A stretch of DNA of 64,000 nt from Octopus sinensis. Taxonomy: Eukaryota. Made by a program: the position numbers and the translations under genes. Shown in pieces: positions 7,005 to 59,718 of the stretch. How positions within the stretch are numbered: position 1 is the first letter of the stretch; each line of letters opens with the position of its first letter. Below the pieces are notes generated by a model. That model ran no database searches. It was given only the letters and a program-made list of their open reading frames with translations, and was not told the DNA's origin. The DNA lies in contig NC_043007.1 of assembly GCF_006345805.1 (NCBI RefSeq), forward strand, positions 64,542,001 through 64,606,000, given 5' to 3'.

Positions 7005-7358
7005 TAAAGCTAAACTGCTTGCCAAAATCATAGTTATGATGAACGTCTCGAAGTATTTATGCTCCACAACTCTGTACATTAAACACCTAAGTTTCCACCA
7101 TGCTTGACCAAATTTTGTGTGCTGGAAATAATTCCAGCAGTTGCAATGTTTTATGCAAAATTGGCACAAGCAGTCATCAGGGGTTTTCACATAGACAATA
7201 TCAACTTCATTAATTTCTGGTTCGCCTTCCACTTGCACTTTGAGGTTGTCTTCTTCACCTCCTTCTGACAATGATGTCAGGCTGGAACTGGCGTGTGACC
7301 CTACTGGACTTTTTAATTCTCCTGCTTCACTCGCAAGTCTAGTTGATGATTCGGAGAG
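7005..7358 (-). CDS. Nav1: Nav1 exon, end of II-III linker plus DIII-S1 (354 nt, phase 0-0)
   Basis: Acceptor (t)n-ctcatttgtag|CTC, donor GCT TTA|gtaagt. Encodes LSESSTRLASEAGELKSPVGSHASSSLTSLSEGGEEDN...PDDCLC...WWKLRCLMYRVVEHKYFETFIITMILASSLAL. Confidence 0.96.
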
Positions 7359-7484: not shown

Positions 7485-8220
7485 CGAGGGACGTTCAATA
7501 AGTAATGCCCCTGACCCACTTGCAGTTGTTTGATCTAGCTGAAATTTTGCATGTGCAATTATTTATATCTCTATGGATTAAGTGGCAAATTACAGCTCTG
7601 AACTAATTGTGTTTTCTGATTTACAGGTGTTTGAACTGAGTCAAGTGTGAAATGGAGCCTGTTGAGTGTCGAGCAGTGATCCGGTTTTTGTATTTGAAAG
7701 GACGCACACCACGGGAGACTTTTGATGAAATGAAAGTAACTTATAATGATGATGCCCCATCATATGACCTTGTAAAATGCTGGCATCGTGAATTCAAACA
7801 TGGTCCAAACTCTGTGGAATCAGCTCCCAGATCTGGTCGCCCCCCCTTCTGCCATTGATGAGGCATCTGTCCATCAAGTTGAGGCTGCCATTTTGGAAGA
7901 TCGACGCATAACTATTCGCCAAATAGCCCATGAGGTCAAGATTAGTACCGGGTCTGTGGAAACTATCATTCATGACCATTTGTATATGCAAAAGGTGTCT
8001 GCCAGATGGATTCCCAGGTTGCTCACACCTTTCCAGAAGCAAGAATGCGTCGAGTGCTCGAGGATGAATTTGGAGATGTGCCAAGAAGATGAGTCAAAAT
8101 TTTTCAAAAGATTGATTACACAGGATGAAACCTGGGTCCATCACTATGATCCAGAGACCAAAGCCCAGTCAATGCAGTGGAAGCACCGTGACTCACCTCC
8201 TCCAAAGAAGGCAAGGGTGC
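7485..8220 (+). mobile_element. Mariner transposon, 5' half (irritans-like), 3'-truncated
   Basis: TA|CGAGGGACGTTCAATAAG TIR. Transposase MEPVECRAVIRFL..., WIPRLL (WVPHEL equivalent), ITQDETWVHHYDPETK (first catalytic Asp). One frameshift; stops at PPPKKARV. Confidence 0.9.
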
Positions 8221-8738
8221 ATAATTTTCTTTAAAATATTTATTATACACAAACATGAATTAATTTTCTGGAAAACTTTCACCATCTAGTTTGATTGGAA
8301 GATTTTCCAAATAAGACTAACAACTTTGTTTTGATTTGTTAAACAAGAATAATTGACTAACAATTATGCATTTTGATAAGTACATGTCTAAATTAGTCAT
8401 TTGACAAGGCTAAAAAAATTTAATTTATGCTGGTATGTAGTAAAATGAAACATGAATATGATTAGTACTTTTTACAATGGGAATCTGAGGAAAATCCGCC
8501 TCATCTTCTATCAAATGAGAAGCTGTACTCCACAACTAGTTACATTAGTGTGGTCTAGTGAGTGGTTCAGATGGCTAGGCCATGTAATCAGAATGTAATA
8601 AGGCCATGTAATAAGCTATCAAGGCTAAAATTTAACATGAAAAAATTGGATCTTGGGCATTGCCTTAATTTGCAATTGAGGATTAAACAGATAAAAGTAG
8701 ATAAATAATAATAATTCTTAAAATACCAAGTGGATTAC

Positions 8739-8803
8739 CTTTCTGTCTCCATCAGCAGCATCTATGCCGTCTTTTTCATCTTTCTCTTTCTCTTTGATCC
8801 CTT
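8739..8803 (-). CDS. Nav1: Nav1 small exon, II-III linker (65 nt, phase 1-0); not in the ORF track
   Basis: Acceptor ttctttaacttcttcag|AA, donor AGA AAG|gtaatc. Translates (E)GIKEKEKDEKDGIDAADGDRK. It supplies exactly the phase 1-to-0 bridge needed between the flanking exons. Confidence 0.85.
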
Positions 8804-16904: not shown

Positions 16905-17223
16905 CTTGATTAGTGGGTGTTACTGCATTTTCATCAACTTCTATTTTATCTCCAAACTTTCCATTTCCAATGATTGCGTGACCATCTAATAATGTTTTTT
17001 TACCATTCACATCTATTTTTGGTAGCTCAGCTATGTTCGCTGGTCTTTTCTTATTAAAAGTGTGCTTTGCACATTTCAATAGACTCATTTTAACCCAATG
17101 TGAGAATCTGACAATTCTGTCAATAGCTTCTTGTAATTTATTGGGTTCATCATCTGATTTTGAACTTTGAAGGCTTTCGGCACCAAATGAGGATAAGAGC
17201 AATGCAAGAAATAGGTTGAGTAC
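16905..17223 (-). CDS. Nav1: Nav1 exon, DII-S6 C-terminal half plus start of II-III linker (319 nt, phase 0-1)
   Basis: Acceptor cacttccag|GTA, donor CAA G|gtaggt. Encodes VLNLFLALLLSSFGAESLQSSKSDDEPNKLQEAIDRIVRF...TPTNQ. Confidence 0.96.
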
Positions 17224-20445: not shown

Positions 20446-23400
20446 ATGGAAGACCTATCAACTTCCATAGTACAGTTGCAAAAAGCAACAACAAGAGGAG
20501 TGACAGGAGTTGCAGAAGTAACTATTACAGCAACAACTACAACAATGATTTTTAGAGCTATATTCAAAGAAGTCCGAAAATGAGGTAAGTTTGATTTCGC
20601 CAGACAGCATTTTAAACTCAATTAATGAATTCACTTATTACCCAGAGGAGGCTGTAACTTTTGCATCATACTACAGAAGGTATAAGTAGATTTTTAAGCA
20701 AGATTGCAAATCATGGTTGGACGAACAAAAAGTGAGACTGTTATTGCAAAAATTAGTTCTGTTAGAGTATGAATGTTACTGTATTTTCATATTGCCCAAA
20801 AAACCCAATGAAATTTGTTTTAAAGAAACAATAGAATTACTGTTTAACATATTTGGTGATAAAACTTCTCTATTGGAGCATTGGATTATAACGGAAAATG
20901 AGAATGGTGATTTTATCACATATGCAAGAACTGTCAACAGGATGTGTGAAATTTTAAACTCAAAGAACTTACACCTGAGATGTTCAAGTGTCTTATTTTC
21001 ATACAAGGTCTTACAGCAAGTGAAGGTACAGAAATTCGGGCAAGAATTCTTTCTAAATTGGAACAAGCAAACCAAGATTTAACCTTACAGTCTGTGGCAA
21101 AAGAATGCCAAAAGATGGTAAACCTGAAAGACAATGTTGAAAATTTCAAGAAAAGGATTCCTCAAAGATACAGATATGCCGACCAGAAAAGTACAACTAT
21201 AAAAGAGCACCACGTCCTAATCCATGTTATAGGAGCGGCGGGGGATAGGGGGGGGGGTCGGAATACATTTAAGAAAAGATTGTTCATTTAAAAATCCAAA
21301 ATGTTACAGTTGCAAAAGAATTGGTCACAAAAGATCACACTGCAGAACAAAATTATGAAGGTCAAACATTAAAAATCCTAGGGTGCTCTCAGCAGAAACA
21401 AAAATTGATCCCCCCCCCCACCAAATTCGAACATGTAAAAATAAATGGATTGCATATTAAACTTCAATTAGATACTAGAAGTGATATTTCAATAATAATA
21501 TGGACACATGGAAGAAAATAGGGAAACCTATGTTAAGAAAAACAGCAAAATCTGCTTGTAATGTGATGGGTGACAAATTACATTTCATAGGCGAAATGTG
21601 GACTAATGTCACATTTCAGGGGAAAACATGCAAAGCGAAAGTGTTTGTCATTAAAAATGCAACTGATCTGTTTGGTACCGATTGGTTTGAATTATTTGAT
21701 TTATGGGACCTCCCCATAAATCTCTACTGTAAAAACGTAAATGGTTGTACCTCTAAAAATAATTTGCCTGGAGAGTTATAGAGAAAATTTTTTTAAAATG
21801 TTCCTGCAAATACTCACAAACAAGGTCTATGTACAAAGACTGAAGCATGTTTTGAATTAGATGATAATGTTACACTTATGTTCAAGTCTAATAGGAAAGA
21901 GCCTTTTGCGGCAATAAAGCAAGTGGCTGATGAGTTGGACAGATTGAAAAAAAAAAACAGAATCATTGAAAAAGTGATTATATGAAATGGGCTGTTCCGA
22001 CTGTATGTATAAAAAAGAAAAATAACAAAATTAGGTTGTGTGCTAATTTTTCAACTGGTTTAAATGACTATTTAAAAATGAATCATTATCCACTACTCAC
22101 CCCAGAAGATATTTTTACAAAACTAAACAGAGGAAAAATATTTTCAAAACTGATCTGTCTGATTTAAATTTAAAAATCAAAGTAGATAAAAAATGCTCAA
22201 AGCTGTTAACAGTCAACACACAGAGAGGTCTATACAAATACAATAGACTACCTTTTGGACTGAAGGTAGCACCTGCAATATTTCAACAGGTGATGGACAT
22301 GATGTTGGCATACTGTCAATTTGTTACTCCTTACCTTGATGGCGTGTTAAAAACGAATTGATGAATGAGCATATCAAGCATGTGAAGTGTGTCTTTAAAA
22401 AATTAAGGATTATAGTTGCACACTCAGTGAAGTGTGAATTTTTTTTGCCTAAAATCAAATACCTAGGTCAAATCATAGATAAGAATGGAAAATGTCCTGA
22501 TCCGTTGGGGGCAGATGTAATCAAGAATATGCCTTCTCCAATGAATAGACTGACATTACAAGCTTTCTTTGGCTTAGTAAATTACTATCAACACTACATT
22601 CGGAATATACATAAATTGAGAGCACCATTAAACGATTTATTAAAAAAGAAGTAAAATGGAATTGGTCAGTAAAGTACCAAAATGCATTTGGAGGCATAAA
22701 GAAAATACTAATTTCTGACTTATCACTAATGCATTTCGACTCTAGATTGGACATTGTTGAAGCATCTGATGCTTCGGAGTATGGAATAGGAGCAGTCTTG
22801 CTACACAAGTATAAAGATGGAAATATGAAGCCAGTTGTTCATTCTTCATGTTCGCTGATAGCAGCAGAAAAAAAAGTATAGTCAGACACAGAAGGAGGCT
22901 CTATTGATTACTTTTGTGGTAAAAAAATTTCACAAATTTCTACATGGTAGAAGTTTTTTTTATTACAAACCAACCATCAACCATTACTATCAAGTTTTGG
23001 ATCAAAGAAGGGATTGCCTACCCATACAGCAAACCGACTGCAATGCTGGGGTACAATGTTGCTGAACTACAATTTCAAGATGCAGTATATTCCCTTGAAA
23101 AATATTGGTCATGCAGACTGTTTATCAAAGCTAATTCCCAAGTGCATGGAACCATTAAAAGAGACTGTGATAGCATCATTGCAGTCAGGAAATGAAGTAA
23201 GGAGCATTGTGTATAATATAATCCGGGAACTGTCAGTGACAGCACATGATATAAAAATGAAATCTGTAGAGGATAGTTACATTACAAGAATGAAAGAAAC
23301 ATTGAAAAATAAGCATAATAAAAATACAAATTCAAATAATTTATCACTATGCAACAATGTCTTAATGTACGTGCAGAGACTAGTAGTACCAAGTGCACTA

Positions 23401-24317
23401 TAGAAATGAGTTTTACAACAATTCCATTGTGGACACCAGGGAATGTCCTGAATGAAAGCTTTAATGAGGAGCTGTGTATATTGGCCGACTATGGACAAAG
23501 ACATAGAGACATTGGTGAAAGCATATAGAGGTTGCACATTGGCGAGACTGAGAACCTATGATTCAGGATACATATCGACTATGGTGGACCAGTGAACGGC
23601 GCATACTATCTAATCATTGTGGATAGCTATACAAAGCAGTCAAAGGTATGCAGATGTAATATACCCACAGCAATGACAACAATAAAGTTCCTACTCGAGT
23701 TATTTGCTTGAAACAGTGTTCTAGACATATTGGTTTCAGATAATGGAACACAATTCATGGGATATGAATTAAGAAAGTTTTGCAAAATACATGCCATAAA
23801 GCACATCTTTATCCTGCCCTGCCACTCGAGGTCAAATGGGCAGGTGGAAAGATTTGCCAACCTGTTCAATTCAGGAAAGTCACCAGTAGAGCTAATGTTT
23901 GTGCATAAAATAAGATCGATCTTCGATGAATTATTGCCAGGAAAAAATACATATAAAGGAAAGACAAAAAATGCATTTGAAGGAAATACAAGAAATATTA
24001 CAAAATATTTCGAAGAAGGAGATAACGTTTATTTTAAAAATTACAAAAATGGTAAAGAAGGTTGGGAGGATGACTGTGTAATCAAAAGATTAGGTAACAT
24101 GATGTATTTAATTAAAGGACAACGTTTGGAACATAAGAGACACCTTAACCAGTTAAAGATGAGACATACAGAAGAACAAAGAGTAATACCAATGGACGTC
24201 TTCTATGATATGTTTGAAGTGCCAGCACTGAGAGATAATAAACCCTGTAGAACTAGCTTCAGAAAACGAAAACAGACTGAATATCTGGAAGTAATACCTA
24301 AACGAAAAAGATATTAA
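20446..24317 (+). pseudogene. gag-pol of the gypsy element, multiple stops and frameshifts
   Basis: Gag EFTYYPEEAVTFASYYRRY...WLDEQKVRLLLQKL; protease LQLDTRSDISII; RT KIRLCANFSTGLND; RNase H ASDASEYGIGAVL; integrase GHQG and VSDNGTQF. Confidence 0.9.
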
Positions 24318-24406
24318 ATTTTCAAAAAAAAAAAAAAAAGGAGAGGTGCTGGAAAGAAAAAAAAAAATACCGCTTCCTCACACTAATTGAAATCTCGAAA
24401 GAGAAA

Positions 24407-26679: not shown

Positions 26680-28847
26680 TTAGAATGTCAACCCAACAGA
26701 GGGACCAGCTATCCAAGTTGACAGTACCTTGGCCGATATAACAATTAAGTGTATGAAGACAGGGAAAGCTCCCAGCCCATCAGGAATCACCGCAGAGATG
26801 CTCAAAATATCTGGCAGTGTCGGCTGTAGCCTAGTCACCTGTATAGTTAACCAGTTGATACACGAAGGAGTCATACCAAATGACTGGTGTAGCAGCATAA
26901 TAGTCAACTGCTACAAAGGTAAAGGTGATGCTTTAGATACAAATAATTACAGAGGTATCAAGTTGTTGGATCAGGTAATGAAGGTCATGGAGAGGGCCGT
27001 AGCCCAACTAATTAGGGACAAAGTCAGTTTAGATGAGATGCAGTTTGGGTTTGTGCCAGGGAAAAGCACCACTGATGCTATATTTCTGGTAAGACAGATG
27101 CAGGTGAAATACCTAGCCAAAGATAAACCTCTGTACCTGGCTTTCGTTGACATGGAGAAAGCCTTTGACAGTGTCCCCCGATCCCTTATCTGGTGGTCAA
27201 TGAGGAAACTTGGGATAAATGAATGGTTAGTGAGAGCTGTGCAAGTCATGTACAGGGATGCTGTCAGTAAGGTGAGGGTTGGCAACGAGTACAGTGAAGA
27301 ATTCTGAGTAGAGGTAGGGGTCCACCAAGGTTCAGTCCTCAGCCCCATCCTATTTATCAGGCAATAACAGACAGGATGCCCCTGGGAGCTCCTCTATGCT
27401 GACGACCTTGCCCTATTGCTGAGTCACTATCAGAACTAGAGGAGAAGTTTCAAGTGTAGAAACAAGGATTAGAAATGAAGGGCCTTAGAGTCAACCTAGC
27501 TAAAACCAAAGTCCTAATAAGTAGGAAGACAGGCAAACCACAAATCCCTTCAGGTAGATGGCCCTGCTCGATCTGTAGAAAGGGCATAGGTAGAAACTCT
27601 ATAAGATGTACCCAGTGTAAGCTGTGGACACATAAGAGGTGCAGTAATATCAAAGGAAGACTAACTGCGAAGATAGTTTTTGTATGTGGCAGATGCTCAG
27701 GAGAAATAAACACTGAAAATTTGCAGAGAACAACTTCTGCCACATTCCAGGAGGAAAAACTAGTAGTTGTTGATAGCTTCTGTTACCTAGGTGACCAAGT
27801 CAGTAGCAGGGGAGGGTGCGCTGAAAGTGTAGCCGCTAGAATAAGAATAGCCTGGGCAAAGTTCAAGAGCTCTTACCTCTGCTGGTGACAAAGGGCCTCT
27901 CGCTCAGAGTAAAAGATAGACTGTATGATGCATGTGTACGAACAGCCATGCTACATGGCAGTGAAACATGGGCTGTGACTGCTGAGGACATGCATAAGCT
28001 CGCAAGGAATGAAGCTAGTATGCTCTGGTGGAAGTGTAATGTCAGTGTGCATACTCGACAGAGTGTTAGTACCTTGAGAGAAAAGTTGGACCTAAGAAGC
28101 ATCAGATGTGGTGTTCAAGAGAGACAACTGTGCTGGTATGGCCATGTAGCAAGAATGGATTTGGATAGCTGTGTGAAAAAGTGCCACACCCTAGTGGTTG
28201 AGGGAACCTGTGGAAGAGGTATACTCAAGAAGACCTGGGATGAAGTGGTGAAGCATGACCTTCAAACATTGGGCCTCACCAAGGCAATGACTAGTGACCG
28301 AGACCTTTGGAAATATGCTGTGCTCGAGAAGACTCGGCAAGCCAAGTGAGACCATAATCTCATGGCTTATACCAGGGGTGTAACCAGCCCACTTATGCAT
28401 ACCTTTCCTTCATTGGACACTAAACTCTGCTTGCAAAGACCTGTTGAAGCAAGTGAAATCGAAATCAAAATCAAATTCAAAGACTGGCATTTGAGTGTGA
28501 TCGTTACCTGCATCACCTTACTGGCACTTGTACTGGTGGCACGTGAAAAAACATTCGAGCGAGGTCGTTGCCAGTGCTGCTAGACTGGCTCCTGTGCAGG
28601 TGGCACATAAAAACACTATTTGAGCTTGGCCATTGCCAGTACTGCCTGACTGGCTCTTGTGCTGGTGGCGTGTAAAAGTACCCACTACACTCTCGGAGGG
28701 CTTGGTGTTAGGAAGGGCATCCAGCTGTAGAAACTCTGCCAGATCAGATTGGAGCCTGGTGCAGCCATCTGGTTTGCCAGACCTTTGTCAAATCATCCAA
28801 CCCATGCTAGCATGGAAAGCAGACATTAAACAATGATGATGATGATG
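26680..28847 (+). mobile_element. 5'-truncated RTE LINE, best preserved copy
   Basis: ORFs 26729-27307, 27475-27888 and 27885-28349 (RT, Cys-rich insert, C-terminus); long 3' UTR with internal repeats; (GAT)n tail. Confidence 0.95.
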
Positions 28848-30168: not shown

Positions 30169-30516
30169 TACAAGATTGCCAATGATCATGGTTAGTAAGA
30201 AGAATGGTACGCAGGCATATCCAGATACTTTCATACACATCCACATGGATTCAATCCATTCGCCACACAATACACGAAATACAATCATGAATGAGTGCAA
30301 AAAGGTTCTAAAACCCCATCGAGGGAGTTCATTATCTTCAAAATTCGATAGAATTTCATATTTTTCTCCAAATAATTGCTGTCCCATGACAGCAAAGATG
30401 AACACTATGATGCCCAACACAAGTGTCAGGTTACCGAGGGCACCCATAGTTCCGGCTACAATGCCGATTAACATATTTAAGGTAGGCCAAGATTTTGCGA
30501 GTTTGAACACTCGAAG
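30169..30516 (-). CDS. Nav1: Nav1 exon, DII S4-S5-P loop-S6 (348 nt, phase 0-0)
   Basis: Acceptor tattgcag|CTT, donor CTT GTA|gtaagt. Encodes [14 protein letters not shown]...[13 protein letters not shown]...IIGNLV, including the DII selectivity-filter Glu of the DEKA ring. Confidence 0.98.
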
Positions 30517-30722: not shown

Positions 30723-30896
30723 TAATCGGAAAGACCGTAAAACAGATAAGCCTTGTACTCCCTCTAATCCCAGTTCCATTAAACTTAAAAATACAATGAA
30801 AGAATCGAAGATGTTCCAAGGGTCTCTGAAGTAGGTTGACGGCGCGAGAGCGAGAATTTTTAGGAAGGCTTCAGCTGCAAAAACAGCTGTAAAAAC
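30723..30896 (-). CDS. Nav1: Nav1 exon, DII S2-S3-S4 (174 nt, phase 0-0); not in the ORF track
   Basis: Acceptor ttttccag|GTT, donor CGA TTA|gtgagt. Translates [58 protein letters not shown]. Confidence 0.97.
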
Positions 30897-31278
30897 CTGG
30901 AAAACATAACAGAATACATCAAATCAGAAACCTAAAAGTTAGCATAAAATGATATCTATGTTAAAATAATAAATTGACATAAATAACTAATTCTTAAGAT
31001 CAATTCTTTGTATGCAAACATATTTTCTTTTTTTCATTGTTTGACATCACATTTTCTAATGCTAGATGGGTAGGATGAGTGTGAAAATCTAAATATTTGC
31101 AAAGTCGATGAATATCTATTATTTGGTAGCTATGAAGCAAAAATAGAATTTACTTTCAATTTAGTGAAACAAAAAACTTTAGTTAAAAAAAGTTTAAAAA
31201 AATGATATATATATATATATGTATAAATAATAATAATAATAATAATAATAACAATAATAATAATAATAATAATAACCA

Positions 31279-31465: not shown

Positions 31466-31521
<56 letters not shown>

Positions 31522-31734
31522 CCTTTCTACTAGAAGCACAAGGAGTGAAATCTTGGGGGAGAGGGTAAGTCGATTACATTGGCCCTAGTGTATCACTGGT
31601 ACTTAATTTATCAACCCCCAAAGGCTGAAAGCAAAGTAGACCTTGGTGGAATTTGAACTCAGAATGTAGTGATGGGTAAAATACTGCTAAACATTTTGCC
31701 CAGTGTGCTAACGATTCTGCTAGCTCACTATCTT
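31279..31734 (-). mobile_element. Two tandem copies (31279-31467, 31521-31734) of an (AAT)n-associated tRNA-type SINE
   Basis: Both read tcctttcta...ggcctgaaat...tcactggtac...gaaaggcaaagt...gaactcagaatg...gccagctcactgcc, separated and flanked by (AAT)n. The central segment resembles the Meta-SINE domain (recollection, unverified). Confidence 0.8.
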
Positions 31735-31984
31735 AATAATAATAATGATGATAATAATAATTGTCATATTGCCACAAGACTGCAGTTTTGTGGGAGAAGG
31801 GTATAGTTTATTCATTTGATTACATTATGTATACTTATTTTACGCAGAGGCATGAAAAACAAAATTGATTGTGGTCAGACATGAAATTAGAAAACTGAGG
31901 GATAAGACTAAATATTGCAAAGTCTGTTGCTCTACCATGTGTGTTTATGCATCAGAATATATTTTCCCTTTGAAAAATACTTAC

Positions 31985-32256
31985 ATAGTTGCCCATTTCT
32001 AAAGCATCTTGTAGACCTTTCGACATATCGTAATGATCAATAGCCATAAAAACGGTATTTAATACGATGCACAATGTTATAAACAGATCCACGAAGGCAT
32101 CCATAATGAAAAATCCAATATATCCCTGCAATGTCTTAAAGGGCGGCCAGCAATCCCAAGCACAGAAAATTCGGAACAATTTGTCCTTAAGCAACTCAGG
32201 TTGAGAAGCGGTTGAACTGACAGAACCTGCAAGTAAAGATGTTGAACTGACAGAAC
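31985..32256 (-). CDS. Nav1: Nav1 exon, end of I-II linker plus DII-S1 (272 nt from upstream acceptor at 32256, or 242 nt from acceptor at 32226; phase 1-0)
   Basis: Two identical acceptors ctttacttgcag|GTTCTG 30 nt apart; donor AAC TAT|gtaagt. Encodes ...KLFRIFCAWDCWPPF...IMDAFVDLFITLCIVLNTVFMAIDHYDM...GNY. Confidence 0.95.
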
Positions 32257-32476
32257 CTGCAAGTAAAGGTGAACAAATGTAATAACAAAGAAAATTTACA
32301 CATAAAAATATGGAAGTCATGTCACTCAAACTTTATATGTTGGTAATTTAGCTTCAGCTGTGTGAGTGCAAATGTATGTGTGTGTGTGTGTGTGTGTATG
32401 TGCGCATGAGAGTTGTGTGCATGTGTGCATGTACATGTATGTATGTGTGTGCATACAGATGTGAGGTTATAGATAC

Positions 32477-37086: not shown

Positions 37087-37137
37087 TTGATCTTGCGCCC
37101 GACGCATGGTTTATTAAATCTTTCAAAACCATGACAT
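37087..37137 (-). CDS. Nav1: Nav1 micro-exon, I-II linker (51 nt, phase 1-1); not in the ORF track
   Basis: Acceptor cctatttcag|AT, donor TCA A|gtaagt. Translates (D)VMVLKDLINHASGARS(S), homologous to insect para DVMVLNDIIEQAAGR. Confidence 0.92.
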
Positions 37138-40292: not shown

Positions 40293-40404
40293 CCTTCATG
40301 TCCACAACATTAGATGCACTTGAACTTGGACAAAGAAAGGGATTATTCGCATAATTCTTCTTTTTAGCGGTTTCACAATCGGAACCACCACTACTAATGG
40401 ATTC
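40293..40404 (-). CDS. Nav1: Nav1 exon, I-II linker (112 nt, phase 0-1); not in the ORF track
   Basis: Acceptor aatcttttag|GAA, donor ATG AAG G|gtaagt. Translates ESISSGGSDCETAKKKNYANNPFLCPSSSASNVVDMK(D), matching the para-family NPF...VVDMKD motif. Phase fits both neighbours. Confidence 0.92.
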
Positions 40405-50346: not shown

Positions 50347-50942
50347 TAATATCACATAGCCATTAAATATTATACAAATGTGAATCTATAGCAAAATACT
50401 GTTTAATTTTATGGGTGTTTACCTCAGATAACATCGGAAAGCACTTTTGTGAAATAAGTAGTGTAAAAGAAATGAAAATATATAAACAGAATTGTTAAAA
50501 ATTTAATTGAATTACAATTCTGTAATTATCATGAAACATTCTTTTGTTTTATTCTATATATTATTTTTCACAAAAGCAATACTTAAGTTAATTATAAAGA
50601 TAAAATATGAAAGTTTTGGGCGTGCTTAACCATGATAAATCAAGTTCATAGATGCAGAAGCATGTATATTCAGATAATGTAAGCATTAAGTACATTTTAT
50701 ATGGCTGCTGGAGTGACATACAGACACACATAATTATATATCATAAACATGAAACAATATGATGAGTATGTTAACATAAATTAGAGATGTACAGAAATTA
50801 GATACCTTACACTATCATTTTATACATATTCTCAAGCATACATAAATTACATATACAGTATATATTAAATATAAATGCATAACATTTTTTCACTACATAT
50901 TACAAATGTAATAAATAAGCAGACATACTCACACCCACACAA

Positions 50943-57063: not shown

Positions 57064-58323
57064 TTGGGTTGGTTAAAATGTCCATTCAGTTTTTTAAGTG
57101 AAAATAAGACACAAGTTACAAGTTTTAAACCCAAAACAGTTTATTTAATCAATGATATAATTACCATTTTGTTCAAGTATCTTCTGTCATCTTGAAGGCA
57201 GATCTATTATTCCCTGCCCAAAGAATTTCCTATCTTTACTGGTAACAAATGCTTCTGGGTGAATTTTTACATCCTCTTTAGAACTGAAGGTTTGTCCATC
57301 CAGTGAATTTTGAAGAGACCAAAACAGGTGGAAATCTGAAGGCATAAGGGCAGGAGAATATGGAGGATATGGCAAAACTTCCCAGCTAAACCCCAGTAAC
57401 TTCTGCTGTGTCTGCAAAGAAGTGTGTGGTCTAGCATTGTTATAATGAAAGATAATGCCCTTATGATTAACGAGTGCTGGATGCTTCTGGTGGATTGCTG
57501 CATTTAATTTGTCCAGCTGGTTGCAGTACACATCCAAATTGATGTTCCTGTCCATTGGGGAGAAGTTCATAAAAGACACCACCATTTCAATCCAATCAAA
57601 TTGAAAGCATAACCTTTGGGTGAAGTCCTGCTTTGAAGGTTGTTTGTGATGGTTTGCTGTGCTTTCCCTATTGATCATTTATGCTTCACATTGTTACAGA
57701 CAATCCATTTTTCAACTCCTGTTATCATTCTCTTCAAAAAAGAATTGTGTTCTTCACATTTCTGCAATGGTTTGCAGACAGAAATCTGCTGGGTGAGGTT
57801 AGCCACATTTAATTGATGTGAAACCCAAATATCAAGCCTGCTGACATAACCAAGTTGATGTAGATGGTTTTCATAATTTGGATAGTTGAAGAATATCTAC
57901 AACCACCTAGGTTGTGTAATAGGGATCAGTGTTACTGTTAATTTCAGTTGGCTGGCCAGAGCCAGGTGCATTTTGAAGCAAAAAAATTCCTGATTGAAAT
58001 CTTCAAAGCCATTTCTGGCATACATGTTCCATAACAGAATCCTCTCTGTACACAGAACATATCTTCCTGTAGGTTTCTGCTACTTTTTTCCTTTTTTAAA
58101 ATATAAAAGCATGAGGTATCAATAATGTTTGTTGTGGTTCTCCATTTTCAGGGTGATTTGAAGCACACAAAATACAATCTGTCTTATCATAAGTTTGCAT
58201 TGAACTACATCAAAGTGTCAACTATCTAACAAGTGTGCATGGGGTAGATTGAAGTTAGTTACTTGTTAGAGTACTTGAAGTTTAGTGTTGACAAAAACTG
58301 AACAGACTTTTTGACCAACCCAA
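57064..58323 (-). mobile_element. Full-length decayed mariner (1260 bp) with TIRs and TA TSD
   Basis: TA|TTGGGTTGGTTAAAATGTCCATTCAGTTTTT ... AAAAACTGAACAGACTTTTTGACCAACCCAA|TA. Transposase remnant FHYNNARPHTS...PYPPYSPALMPSDFHLF. Confidence 0.93.
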
Positions 58324-59247: not shown

Positions 59248-59718
59248 ATTGTCTTCCAGCTTTGTCTTGTCTACGACAACTTCAGGTAGTAAATGGGATC
59301 CGCGTCTCTTACCCCAGTTCCAAGGGTTGTCTAATTTTCCTTCTTTAAATTTTAGTGGATCCCCTGATGATTGTTGCGAGTGTCTGCTTGTATGAGATGT
59401 TCGACTAATTTGTGACGCATAACTACTACGCCTTGATGATAATCTCCCATCAACATGGGACCATCTGCGTTGGTGAGACAAAAAACTAGATCGCCTACCA
59501 TTAAGAACACTTTTTAAAGGTAGGTTGCATAAATCGTCTGATGTTGGCGTGACTGCATTCGAGTCATCTGCAAACGGTAAATTTAGATTCTCCAAATAAT
59601 GAGGCATAAGCGGTTGCCGATCATTAGCACGGGTATTTTTTACTTTCCTCCAAGAGAGCTGACTGGTTTTGCTGCCACGCCGAAGAGGGAACGGTGAGCC
59701 AGGCAAACTTAAGCTGGC
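59248..59718 (-). CDS. Nav1: Voltage-gated Na+ channel alpha subunit, exon in domain I-II linker (471 nt, phase 0-0)
   Basis: Acceptor ctctcccatttcag|GCC, donor GAC AAT|gtaagt. Encodes ASLSLPGSPFPLRRGSK...LPFADDSNAVTP...PEVVVDKTKLEDN. SLPGSPF and LPFADDS are hallmark motifs of the Nav1/para I-II loop. Confidence 0.95.

What the first reader, a model, noticed from the sequence alone, without database searches (positions are those of the whole stretch)
32211..32270. 30-bp tandem duplication of a Nav1 splice acceptor creates two in-frame 3' splice sites
Seen: gttgaactgacagaacctgcaagtaaagat (32211-32240) and ...aaaggt (32241-32270) are 29/30 identical. On the coding strand each unit carries a pyrimidine tract, CAG and the first 16 exon bases. 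The upstream AG (exon start 32256) gives ...ARSSSVSSTSLLAGSVSSTASQPE; the downstream AG (32226) gives ...ARSSSVSSTASQPE. Both keep the frame with no stop. Established: insect para has optional exon b at this same end of the I-II linker, and it affects channel properties. Inference: this may be a young, lineage-specific route to +/-10-aa isoforms with extra Ser/Thr sites, or fixed intron-to-exon recruitment if only the first AG is used.
Basis: partly seen in the sequence, partly recalled or inferred. Interest (0 to 1): 0.7.

Follow-up and report, generated by a model that had tools for sequence, protein, structure and literature searches.

The report
Duplicated splice acceptor in octopus Nav1

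Summary
Window 32211-32270 holds two tandem 30-nt units that match at 29 of 30 positions. On the coding (minus) strand each unit carries 14 nt of intron end (…ctttacttgcag) and the first 16 nt of the DII-S1 exon of a Nav1 sodium-channel gene.

The window is the Octopus sinensis Nav1 locus. Splicing my exon model at 32256 or 32226 reproduces RefSeq isoforms X1/X2 (long, +10 aa) and X3 (short) exactly. O. bimaculoides and O. vulgaris also have both forms annotated; the O. vulgaris alternative forms came from a transcript-based pipeline. cDNAs from Hapalochlaena lunulata and Abdopus aculeatus are the short form.

The duplication is not young. The Argonauta hians genome carries both units. The last 41 intron bases plus the 30-nt optional segment differ from Octopus at only 4 of 71 positions, against 11 of 26 four-fold sites in the same exon. 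Both changes inside the optional segment are synonymous. A cuttlefish genome has one acceptor, and other molluscs match the short form in length.

Insect para's optional VSVYYFPT segment sits at the same junction but is unrelated in sequence. A vent-snail-like genome has the same acceptor in a perfect 7-copy, 36-nt array.

This is a real, conserved alternative 3' splice site. The isoforms are already annotated; the origin and age are the new part.

The parts
32241..32270 (-). Upstream repeat unit on the coding strand: acctttacttgcag|GTTCTGTCAGTTCAAC (14 nt of intron end plus 16 nt of exon).
32211..32240 (-). Downstream repeat unit: atctttacttgcag|GTTCTGTCAGTTCAAC. It differs from the upstream unit only at its second base (t versus c).
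32257..32258 (-). Upstream acceptor AG. The exon then starts at 32256 and gives the long isoform (O. sinensis RefSeq X1/X2).
32227..32228 (-). Downstream acceptor AG. The exon then starts at 32226 and gives the short isoform (RefSeq X3), which has the ancestral molluscan length.
32227..32256 (-). Optional 30-nt segment, which is exon or intron depending on the acceptor used. It adds 10 aa (…SST-SLLAGSVSST-ASQ…) to the end of the I-II linker.
32257..32297 (-). Last 41 nt of the intron (including the upstream AG). It is 39/41 identical between Octopus and Argonauta. It probably holds the branch point(s) and regulatory sites; candidates are ttattAc and ttcAc.
31985..32226 (-). Constitutive part of the DII-S1 exon (…SVSSTASQPELLKDKLFRIFCAWDCW…MGNY), followed by a gtaagt donor.
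37087..37137 (-). Upstream 51-nt exon (DVMVLKDLINHASGARS). Its donor at 37087 joins either acceptor, and the intron is phase 1.
59248..59718 (-). Large I-II linker exon (157 codons). It is skipped in O. bimaculoides isoforms X5 and X6.
50423..50443 (-). Optional 21-nt microexon (CFPMLSE) in the I-II linker. It is present in O. sinensis X1 and X3 and absent in X2.
40293..40404 (-). I-II linker exon (ESISSGGSDCET…NVVDMK).
30723..30896 (-). DII S2-S3 exon.
30169..30516 (-). DII S4-S6 exon with the pore loop (…CGEWIESMW…).
16905..17223 (-). End of DII S6 and first II-III linker exon.
8739..8803 (-). II-III linker exon (EGIKEKEKDEKDGIDAADGDRK).
7005..7358 (-). End of the II-III linker and DIII S1 exon.

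Best explanation
In an ancestor of incirrate octopods, 30 bp spanning the intron/exon boundary of the DII-S1 exon of the Nav1 (para-type) sodium-channel gene were duplicated in tandem. The gene has kept two complete acceptors (pyrimidine tract + CAG|G) 30 nt apart ever since. Because 30 is a multiple of three and the 14 former intron bases contain no stop, both acceptors give a working reading frame.

The donor at 37087 is joined either to 32256 or to 32226. The first choice gives the long form, with 10 extra Ser/Thr-rich residues (SLLAGSVSST) at the cytoplasmic end of the I-II linker, about 13 residues before KDKLF and DII-S1. The second choice gives the short form, which has the ancestral molluscan length.

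Shown here: the duplication; the reading frames; the exact match of both splice choices to annotated isoforms; its presence in two octopod families and absence in a cuttlefish; and strong purifying selection on the intron end and the optional segment.

Inferred: the choice between acceptors is regulated through the conserved 41-nt intron end; and the extra segment tunes channel expression, gating or phosphorylation, as optional I-II-linker segments do in insect channels.
For: Gene identity and annotation
- All exons in the window have GT-AG borders and one open frame.
- Splicing at 32256 or 32226, with or without the microexon, gives peptides of 719-729 aa that are exact substrings of O. sinensis XP_036363514.1 (X1), XP_036363515.1 (X2) and XP_036363516.1 (X3).
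- Long and short forms are both annotated in O. bimaculoides (X1/X2/X5 versus X3/X4/X6) and in O. vulgaris (CAI9730095 versus CAI9730096-98).
- The O. vulgaris alternative forms were added by PASA updates from Iso-Seq and RNA-seq alignments (PMC10700109).
- The H. lunulata and A. aculeatus cDNA entries are the short form.

Age
- Argonauta hians genomic DNA (L083 43931-43990) has both units and both CAG|G acceptors, in frame.
- The c-versus-t difference at the second base of the two units is shared by both genera, and orthologous units are closer to each other (2 differences) than non-orthologous ones (3).
- The cuttlefish genome L081 has a single acceptor, and its protein has the short length.
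- Other molluscs have 43-45 aa between DVMVL and WDC/WNC. The octopus short form has 43 and the long form 53.

Selection (Octopus versus Argonauta)
- Intron -41..-1 is 39/41 identical. The optional 30 nt is 28/30 identical, and both changes are synonymous in the long frame.
- Four-fold sites in the same exon differ at 11 of 26.
- The binomial probability of 4 or fewer differences in 71 is 3e-12 at the four-fold-site rate and 3e-6 at the third-position rate.
- The last 50 intron bases are 90% identical here, against 42%, 58% and 46% at the three neighbouring constitutive acceptors.
Against: I could not count splice-junction reads. Use of the upstream acceptor rests on gene models from two annotation pipelines in three species and on evolutionary constraint, not on reads I inspected.

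[quoted passage not shown] The downstream acceptor has only 18 nt free of AG upstream of it and one weak branch-point candidate in that stretch. How the downstream acceptor is reached is therefore unexplained, even though the short form is the one cloned and annotated everywhere.

The constraint on the optional segment could come partly or wholly from its role as pyrimidine tract and acceptor for the downstream site rather than from its coding role; two synonymous changes are too few to separate these. No functional data exist for either isoform. The genomic state in Hapalochlaena and Abdopus is unknown.
Confidence: 0.8

Rival explanations
1. Only one acceptor matters in vivo. The other isoform is splicing noise or an annotation by-product, and the conservation reflects only the splice signals needed by the acceptor that is really used.
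For: No junction reads were inspected. The first-AG rule favours a single dominant site. Every cDNA clone retrieved is short. The optional segment doubles as the pyrimidine tract and AG of the downstream site, so conservation alone does not prove that it codes for protein.
Against: Two different annotation pipelines give both forms in three species. If the upstream copy were useless, it should have decayed at about the neutral rate (11 of 26 four-fold sites differ). Instead its AG, its pyrimidine tract, the open frame and the 10-aa sequence are all kept in Argonauta, and the only changes are synonymous. The 41 intron bases upstream are far more conserved than at constitutive acceptors, as expected for a regulated choice.
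Confidence: 0.1
2. The duplication is young or species-specific, as the first reader inferred from the 29/30 identity of the two copies.
For: The two copies in the window differ at one base only.
Against: Both units are present in the Argonauta hians genome, and the long isoform occurs in three Octopus species. The copies stay alike because both are constrained, or because of gene conversion. In Argonauta they differ at 5 of 30 positions.
Confidence: 0.02
3. Argonauta and Octopus duplicated the same 30 bp independently, because this acceptor is prone to slippage.
For: The same acceptor sits in a perfect 7-copy, 36-nt array in a vent-snail-like genome. Duplication at this site has therefore recurred in molluscs.
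Against: The unit length and boundaries are identical in both genera. The paralogue-specific c/t difference is shared, and orthologous units are closer to each other than non-orthologous ones.
Confidence: 0.04
4. The duplication is an assembly artefact.
For: None found. Raw reads could not be inspected.
Against: The two copies differ by one base. The same structure is present in an independent Argonauta assembly. It is also implied by the long-isoform proteins from the separate O. bimaculoides and O. vulgaris assemblies.
Confidence: 0.01

Closest known systems
Optional exon b (VSVYYFPT) of insect para / Nav1
   Same: It is an optional short peptide at exactly the same exon junction, between the DVMVL… exon and the DII-S1 exon. 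Among 120 long Nav1-type proteins retrieved, 49 carry the YYFP motif, and pairs of isoforms from one species differ only by these 8 aa. A different I-II-linker optional exon (exon B of cockroach BgNav) is reported to change current amplitude (PMC4309913).
   Different: There is no sequence similarity (VSVYYFPT versus SLLAGSVSST). The octopod segment is absent from a cuttlefish and from other molluscs, so it arose independently. The octopod segment is made by a duplicated acceptor; I did not examine how exon b is spliced in insects.
Tandem alternative 3' splice sites (the NAGNAG type and wider-spaced alternative acceptors)
   Same: Two acceptors on one exon give in-frame isoforms that differ by a few residues. 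Alternative acceptor use is already known in Nav linkers, for example exon 23 of a psocid Nav in the II-III linker (PMC3805903).
   Different: The spacing is 30 nt, not 3. The two sites are near-identical copies made by duplication, so their local strength over -14..+16 is almost the same. The choice must therefore depend on branch-point use or on bound factors.
Short duplications across a 3' splice site in human disease genes (HEXB and CHRNE cases)
   Same: A short tandem duplication of an intron/exon boundary creates a second acceptor and an in-frame insertion.
   Different: Those are recent pathogenic alleles; this one is ancient and conserved. I recalled these cases from memory and could not retrieve the papers, so treat them as a lead only.
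Origin of alternative splicing by tandem exon duplication (mutually exclusive exons, for example para c/d and k/l)
   Same: Tandem duplication inside a gene produces alternative mRNA forms.
   Different: Here only 30 bp spanning an acceptor were duplicated, not a whole exon. The result is an extension or truncation of one exon, not mutually exclusive exons.

Membership tests
Nav1 (para-type) voltage-gated sodium channel gene | Four-domain channel with sodium-channel linker domains (Pfam Ion_trans, Na_trans_cytopl, Na_trans_assoc). | tested here: met
   The window encodes the I-II linker through DIII-S1. That stretch is 100% identical to O. sinensis full-length proteins. The representative of their cluster (O. 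bimaculoides isoform X3) has PF00520, PF11933 and PF06512 precomputed.
Nav1 (para-type) voltage-gated sodium channel gene | DEKA selectivity filter (Nav1) rather than DEEA (Nav2). | tested here: met
   The DII Glu lies in CGEWIESMW, encoded in the window. In the matching O. sinensis proteins the other positions read DI QDYWE, DIII TFKGW (Lys) and DIV TSAGW.
Nav1 (para-type) voltage-gated sodium channel gene | Orthology to proteins named type 1 / para. | tested here: met
   The closest cDNA-derived relatives are deposited as 'voltage-gated sodium channel invertebrate type 1' (H. lunulata, A. aculeatus). The best non-cephalopod hits are para-like or Nav1-like proteins.
Alternative 3' splice-site pair | Two AGs, each with a pyrimidine tract, at one exon, and both in frame. 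| tested here: met
Alternative 3' splice-site pair | Both junctions are present in mRNA. | tested here: inconclusive
   Both forms are in RefSeq models for O. sinensis and O. bimaculoides and in the transcript-based O. vulgaris annotation. The cDNAs retrieved are all short.
Alternative 3' splice-site pair | Both sites and the flanking intron are conserved across species. | tested here: met
   Octopus and Argonauta differ at 4 of 71 positions over -41..+30, against 11 of 26 four-fold sites. Control acceptors are 42-58% identical over -50..-1.
Tandem duplication origin | Adjacent direct copies in the ingroup and a single copy in the outgroup. | tested here: met
   There are two units in Octopus and in Argonauta. 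The cuttlefish has one unit, with no second copy within 3 kb upstream.
Homologue of insect para exon b | Same position in the gene. | tested here: met
Homologue of insect para exon b | Sequence similarity, or presence in intermediate lineages that would imply common descent. | tested here: not met
   The sequences are unrelated. The segment is absent in the cuttlefish genome and in gastropod and chiton proteins. It works like exon b but is not a member of that family.
NAGNAG tandem acceptor | Acceptors 3 nt apart. | tested here: not met
   The spacing is 30 nt.

The most novel reading that the evidence does not exclude
The boundary between the I-II linker and DII-S1 may be a recurrent evolutionary site for optional segments in Nav1. 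Octopods made one by duplicating the acceptor and have kept both sites under selection since before Argonautidae and Octopodidae split. A vent-snail-like gastropod has expanded the same acceptor into seven in-frame copies. Insects evolved the unrelated optional exon b at the same junction. If the octopod 10-aa segment changes current density, gating or kinase regulation as insect I-II-linker exons do, this would be convergent evolution of one regulatory device in two large-brained invertebrate groups, with an unusually clear mutational origin.
Probability: 0.3. Interest if true: 0.6.

Novelty: new member of a known kind. Interest (0 to 1): 0.4.

Why it matters
Alternative splicing of sodium-channel linkers tunes excitability in insects and mammals, but it has hardly been studied in cephalopods, where attention has gone to RNA editing. 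No octopus paper returned by my one splice-variant search contained the term.

This case has a simple and datable origin: a 30-bp duplication absent from a cuttlefish and shared by two octopod families. It has clear signs of selection. It gives two isoforms that can be made and compared directly.

It also poses a mechanistic puzzle. Two nearly identical acceptors lie 30 nt apart, and the downstream one is widely used although the first-AG rule favours the upstream one. That makes it a natural test case for 3' splice-site choice.

Practically, anyone cloning or modelling octopus Nav1, for example in tetrodotoxin-resistance studies, should know that the two forms exist.

Tried and rejected
Protein searches\n- Two searches with short queries (165 and 179 aa) returned only fragments under about 310 aa and no octopod. 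The tool appears to return only hits of roughly similar length to the query. A 1885-aa profile query (A1) then found the octopod proteins.\n- Exact look-ups of the window's 125-aa and 122-aa genomic ORFs found nothing.\n- The representative library gave only a nemertean and a spider Nav1 as top hits.\n\nDNA sources\n- A degenerate-pattern scan of metagenome contigs gave 79 loci. None was a credible orthologue, apart from two 9-aa matches that I did not pursue.\n- Genomic DNA of O. vulgaris could not be fetched because the gene spans 147 kb. The O. bimaculoides X2 protein is not indexed.\n\nSplice-site reasoning\n- Over -14..+16 the two sites differ at one pyrimidine only, so position-weight scoring cannot separate them.\n- From AG-free distances and branch-point motifs I first expected the upstream AG to dominate, which would mean fixed exonisation. 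I dropped this because the short form is annotated and cloned everywhere.\n\nRNA structure\n- The two ACUUGCAGGU copies can pair with each other, but the fold is not significant (z = -1.66) and shows no covariation. I do not rely on it.\n\nLiterature\n- I could not retrieve papers on duplicated 3' splice sites (HEXB, CHRNE), nor a dated Octopus-Argonauta divergence.\n\nChance\n- Short non-microsatellite tandem duplications are common in this window, roughly a dozen arrays of period 13-32 in 64 kb. One that happens to straddle an acceptor is not surprising as a mutation; its retention is the notable part.

Full report
**1. The observation**

Window 32211-32240 and 32241-32270 are tandem copies that match at 29 of 30 positions, with one more matching base at 32271. 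The 28-mer core occurs nowhere else in the window even with three mismatches allowed, and none of 100 shuffles gave a match.

Read on the minus strand, the sequence is …tttgttcacctttacttgcag|GTTCTGTCAGTTCAACatctttacttgcag|GTTCTGTCAGTTCAACCGCTTCTCAACCTGAG…. Each unit holds 14 nt of intron end (pyrimidine tract and CAG) and 16 nt of exon.

**2. The gene**

The minus strand carries a coherent exon chain. Every border is GT-AG and the frame is open throughout:
- I-II linker exon, 59718-59248
- optional 21-nt microexon, 50443-50423
- 40404-40293
- 37137-37087
- DII-S1 exon, 32256 or 32226 to 31985
- 30896-30723
- 30516-30169
- 17223-16905
- 8803-8739
- 7358-7005

Splicing at 32256 with the microexon gives a 729-aa peptide that is an exact substring of O. 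sinensis RefSeq isoform X1. Splicing at 32256 without the microexon matches X2. Splicing at 32226 with the microexon matches X3 (accessions). O. vulgaris differs from the window peptide at two residues over the first 582 compared and O. bimaculoides at seven. The window is therefore the O. sinensis Nav1 locus.

The protein has the DEKA filter, and its cDNA-derived relatives are deposited as 'invertebrate type 1'.

**3. Are both acceptors used?**

Public annotation lists both forms in three species:

| Species | Long (+10 aa) | Short |
|---|---|---|
| O. sinensis | X1, X2 | X3 |
| O. bimaculoides | X1, X2, X5 | X3, X4, X6 |
| O. vulgaris | CAI9730095 | CAI9730096, CAI9730097, CAI9730098 |

The O. 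vulgaris paper states that alternative forms were added by PASA updates from Iso-Seq and RNA-seq alignments (PMC10700109). The cDNA-derived sequences from Hapalochlaena lunulata and Abdopus aculeatus, and the Argonauta hians model, are short.

I could not inspect reads, so this evidence is indirect. It still argues against constitutive use of the first AG only.

**4. Age and origin**

A cuttlefish genome (Acanthosepion pharaonis, L081) has the same exons with a single acceptor, …ttttttag|GCTCGGTCAGTTCATCC. No second copy lies within 3 kb upstream, and the protein has the short length. Gastropod and chiton Nav1 proteins have 43-45 residues between DVMVL and WDC/WNC. The octopus short form has 43 and the long form 53. 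The single acceptor is therefore ancestral.

The Argonauta hians genome (L083 43931-43990) has both units: acgtttacttgcag|GTTCTGTCAGTTCCAC gtctttacttgcag|GTTCAGTCAGTTCAAC. Both acceptors are intact and the same 10 residues are encoded. Argonautidae and Octopodidae are separate families of Incirrata.

The c/t difference at the second base of the two units is shared by both genera. Orthologous units differ at 2 positions and non-orthologous units at 3. One duplication before the split is the simplest reading. The copies have stayed alike because both are constrained, or through gene conversion.

**5. Selection**

Comparisons between Octopus and Argonauta:

| Region | Differences |
|---|---|
| Intron, -41..-1 | 2 of 41 |
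| Optional 30 nt | 2 of 30, both synonymous in the long frame (TCA/TCC Ser, ACA/ACG Thr) |
| Four-fold sites, constitutive part of the same exon | 11 of 26 |
| Third codon positions, same part | 22 of 80 |
| Intron after the donor, +1..+40 | 20 of 40 |

Four or fewer differences in 71 has binomial probability 3e-12 at the four-fold-site rate and 3e-6 at the third-position rate.

The last 50 intron bases are 90% identical here. At the three neighbouring constitutive acceptors the figures are 42%, 58% and 46%. Strong conservation of the flanking intron is the usual mark of a regulated alternative exon.

The constraint on the optional segment could be a splice-signal constraint, a coding constraint, or both. 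Two synonymous changes are suggestive but too few to decide.

**6. Mechanism**

Over -14..+16 the two acceptors differ by one pyrimidine, so their local strength is nearly equal.

The upstream site has a 66-nt AG-free zone and several branch-point candidates at -27, -24 and -14. The downstream site has only 18 nt free of AG and one weak candidate in that stretch. An adenine at -16 (32242) also lies there and is conserved in Argonauta (read).

[quoted passage not shown] Under that rule, a branch point in the conserved block should give the long form. Reaching the downstream AG needs one of three things: its own branch point, a factor that masks the upstream AG or its tract, or kinetic competition at the second catalytic step. 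Which of these applies is unknown. The conserved 41-nt block is where I would look.

A pairing between the two ACUUGCAGGU copies is predicted, but it is not significant and shows no covariation.

**7. Likely function (inference)**

The segment lies in the cytoplasmic I-II linker, about 13 residues before KDKLF and DII-S1. It duplicates a Ser/Thr-rich motif (SVSST). Optional I-II-linker exons change current amplitude in a cockroach channel, and I-II-loop splicing alters activity in human Nav1.3 (PMC4309913). A modulatory role in expression, gating or phosphorylation is plausible but untested.

**8. Comparison with what is known**

The two segments are unrelated in sequence and arose independently.

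Alternative acceptor use in Nav linkers is known, for example exon 23 of a psocid Nav (PMC3805903).

The isoforms themselves are already in RefSeq. In my one literature search on octopus sodium-channel splice variants, none of the octopus papers returned contained the term 'splice variant'. I know of no description of the origin by acceptor duplication, its age, or the constraint on it.

**9. A related observation**

A 2.6-Mb contig in an ENA assembly carries a Nav1 gene whose closest named relative is that of the vent snail Gigantopelta aegis: 99% identity in the DII pore exon and 84% in the DII-S1 exon. In that contig the orthologous acceptor lies in a perfect 7.0-copy, 36-nt array. The unit is tgtactacgtcctatttcaacttgcag|GTTTCATGA (L084 2966-3217), and every copy is in frame with no stop.

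The same acceptor has therefore been duplicated again in another mollusc, unless this is an assembly artefact.

**10. Verdict**

The feature is real and its anatomy was read correctly. The two-isoform interpretation is supported by existing annotation. The 'young' inference is wrong.

It is a new, well-documented member of a known kind: an alternative 3' splice site in a sodium-channel linker, here created by duplication of the acceptor. Its interest is moderate, mainly for channel evolution and for the study of 3' splice-site choice.

Noticed in passing
L084 2966-3217 (ENA ERZ25071447 ctg87273): A gastropod-like Nav1 locus, closest to Gigantopelta aegis, has the orthologous DII-S1 acceptor inside a perfect 36-nt x 7.0 tandem array (27 nt of intron end plus the first 9 nt of exon). 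This gives seven in-frame candidate acceptors with no stop. It is either an independent recurrence of acceptor duplication at the same exon or an assembly artefact.
   Followed up: partly
window 50423-50443 (minus strand): A 21-nt optional microexon, TGCTTTCCGATGTTATCTGAG (CFPMLSE), flanked by …aaaag| and |gtaaac, lies in the I-II linker. It is present in O. sinensis X1/X3 and O. bimaculoides X1/X3 and absent in the other isoforms.
   Followed up: partly
window 59248-59718 (minus strand): The 471-nt I-II linker exon, rich in RRxS-type sites, is skipped in O. bimaculoides isoforms X5 and X6. This removes 157 residues in frame.
   Followed up: no
window 7652-8234, 20700-24320, 26729-28349, 57187-57678: The introns hold long transposon-like ORFs that were not characterised, for example at 23730-24317, 26729-27307, 27885-28349, 7788-8234 and 57187-57678. 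By eye they look like retroelement and transposase genes; no search was run on them.
   Followed up: no
window 31226-31275 and 31467-31521, with flanks: Two similar repeat copies, each next to an (ATT)n tract, lie in the 1-kb intron between the DII-S1 and DII S2-S3 exons. A similar element lies near 31700-31760. They are probably SINE-like elements.
   Followed up: no
L012 2553-2579 and L061 1463-1489 (freshwater metagenome contigs): Both contigs give an exact 9-aa match, FCAWDCWPP, to the DII-S1 exon. They may be Nav1 exons of freshwater invertebrates, or chance matches.
   Followed up: no
window 32227-32262 (minus strand); L083 43951-43990: The acceptor core ACTTGCAGGT is a near-palindrome (8 of 10 positions), and the two copies are predicted to pair with each other in RNA. 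The fold is not significant (z = -1.66) and shows no covariation. A GTTCA motif lies just upstream of the first unit and near the end of each unit, which may have helped replication slippage.
   Followed up: partly
tool behaviour: the search for homologous proteins returned only proteins of about 0.55 to 1.75 times the query length. Short exon-sized queries therefore miss full-length eukaryotic proteins. A long query or a long profile is needed.
   Followed up: yes
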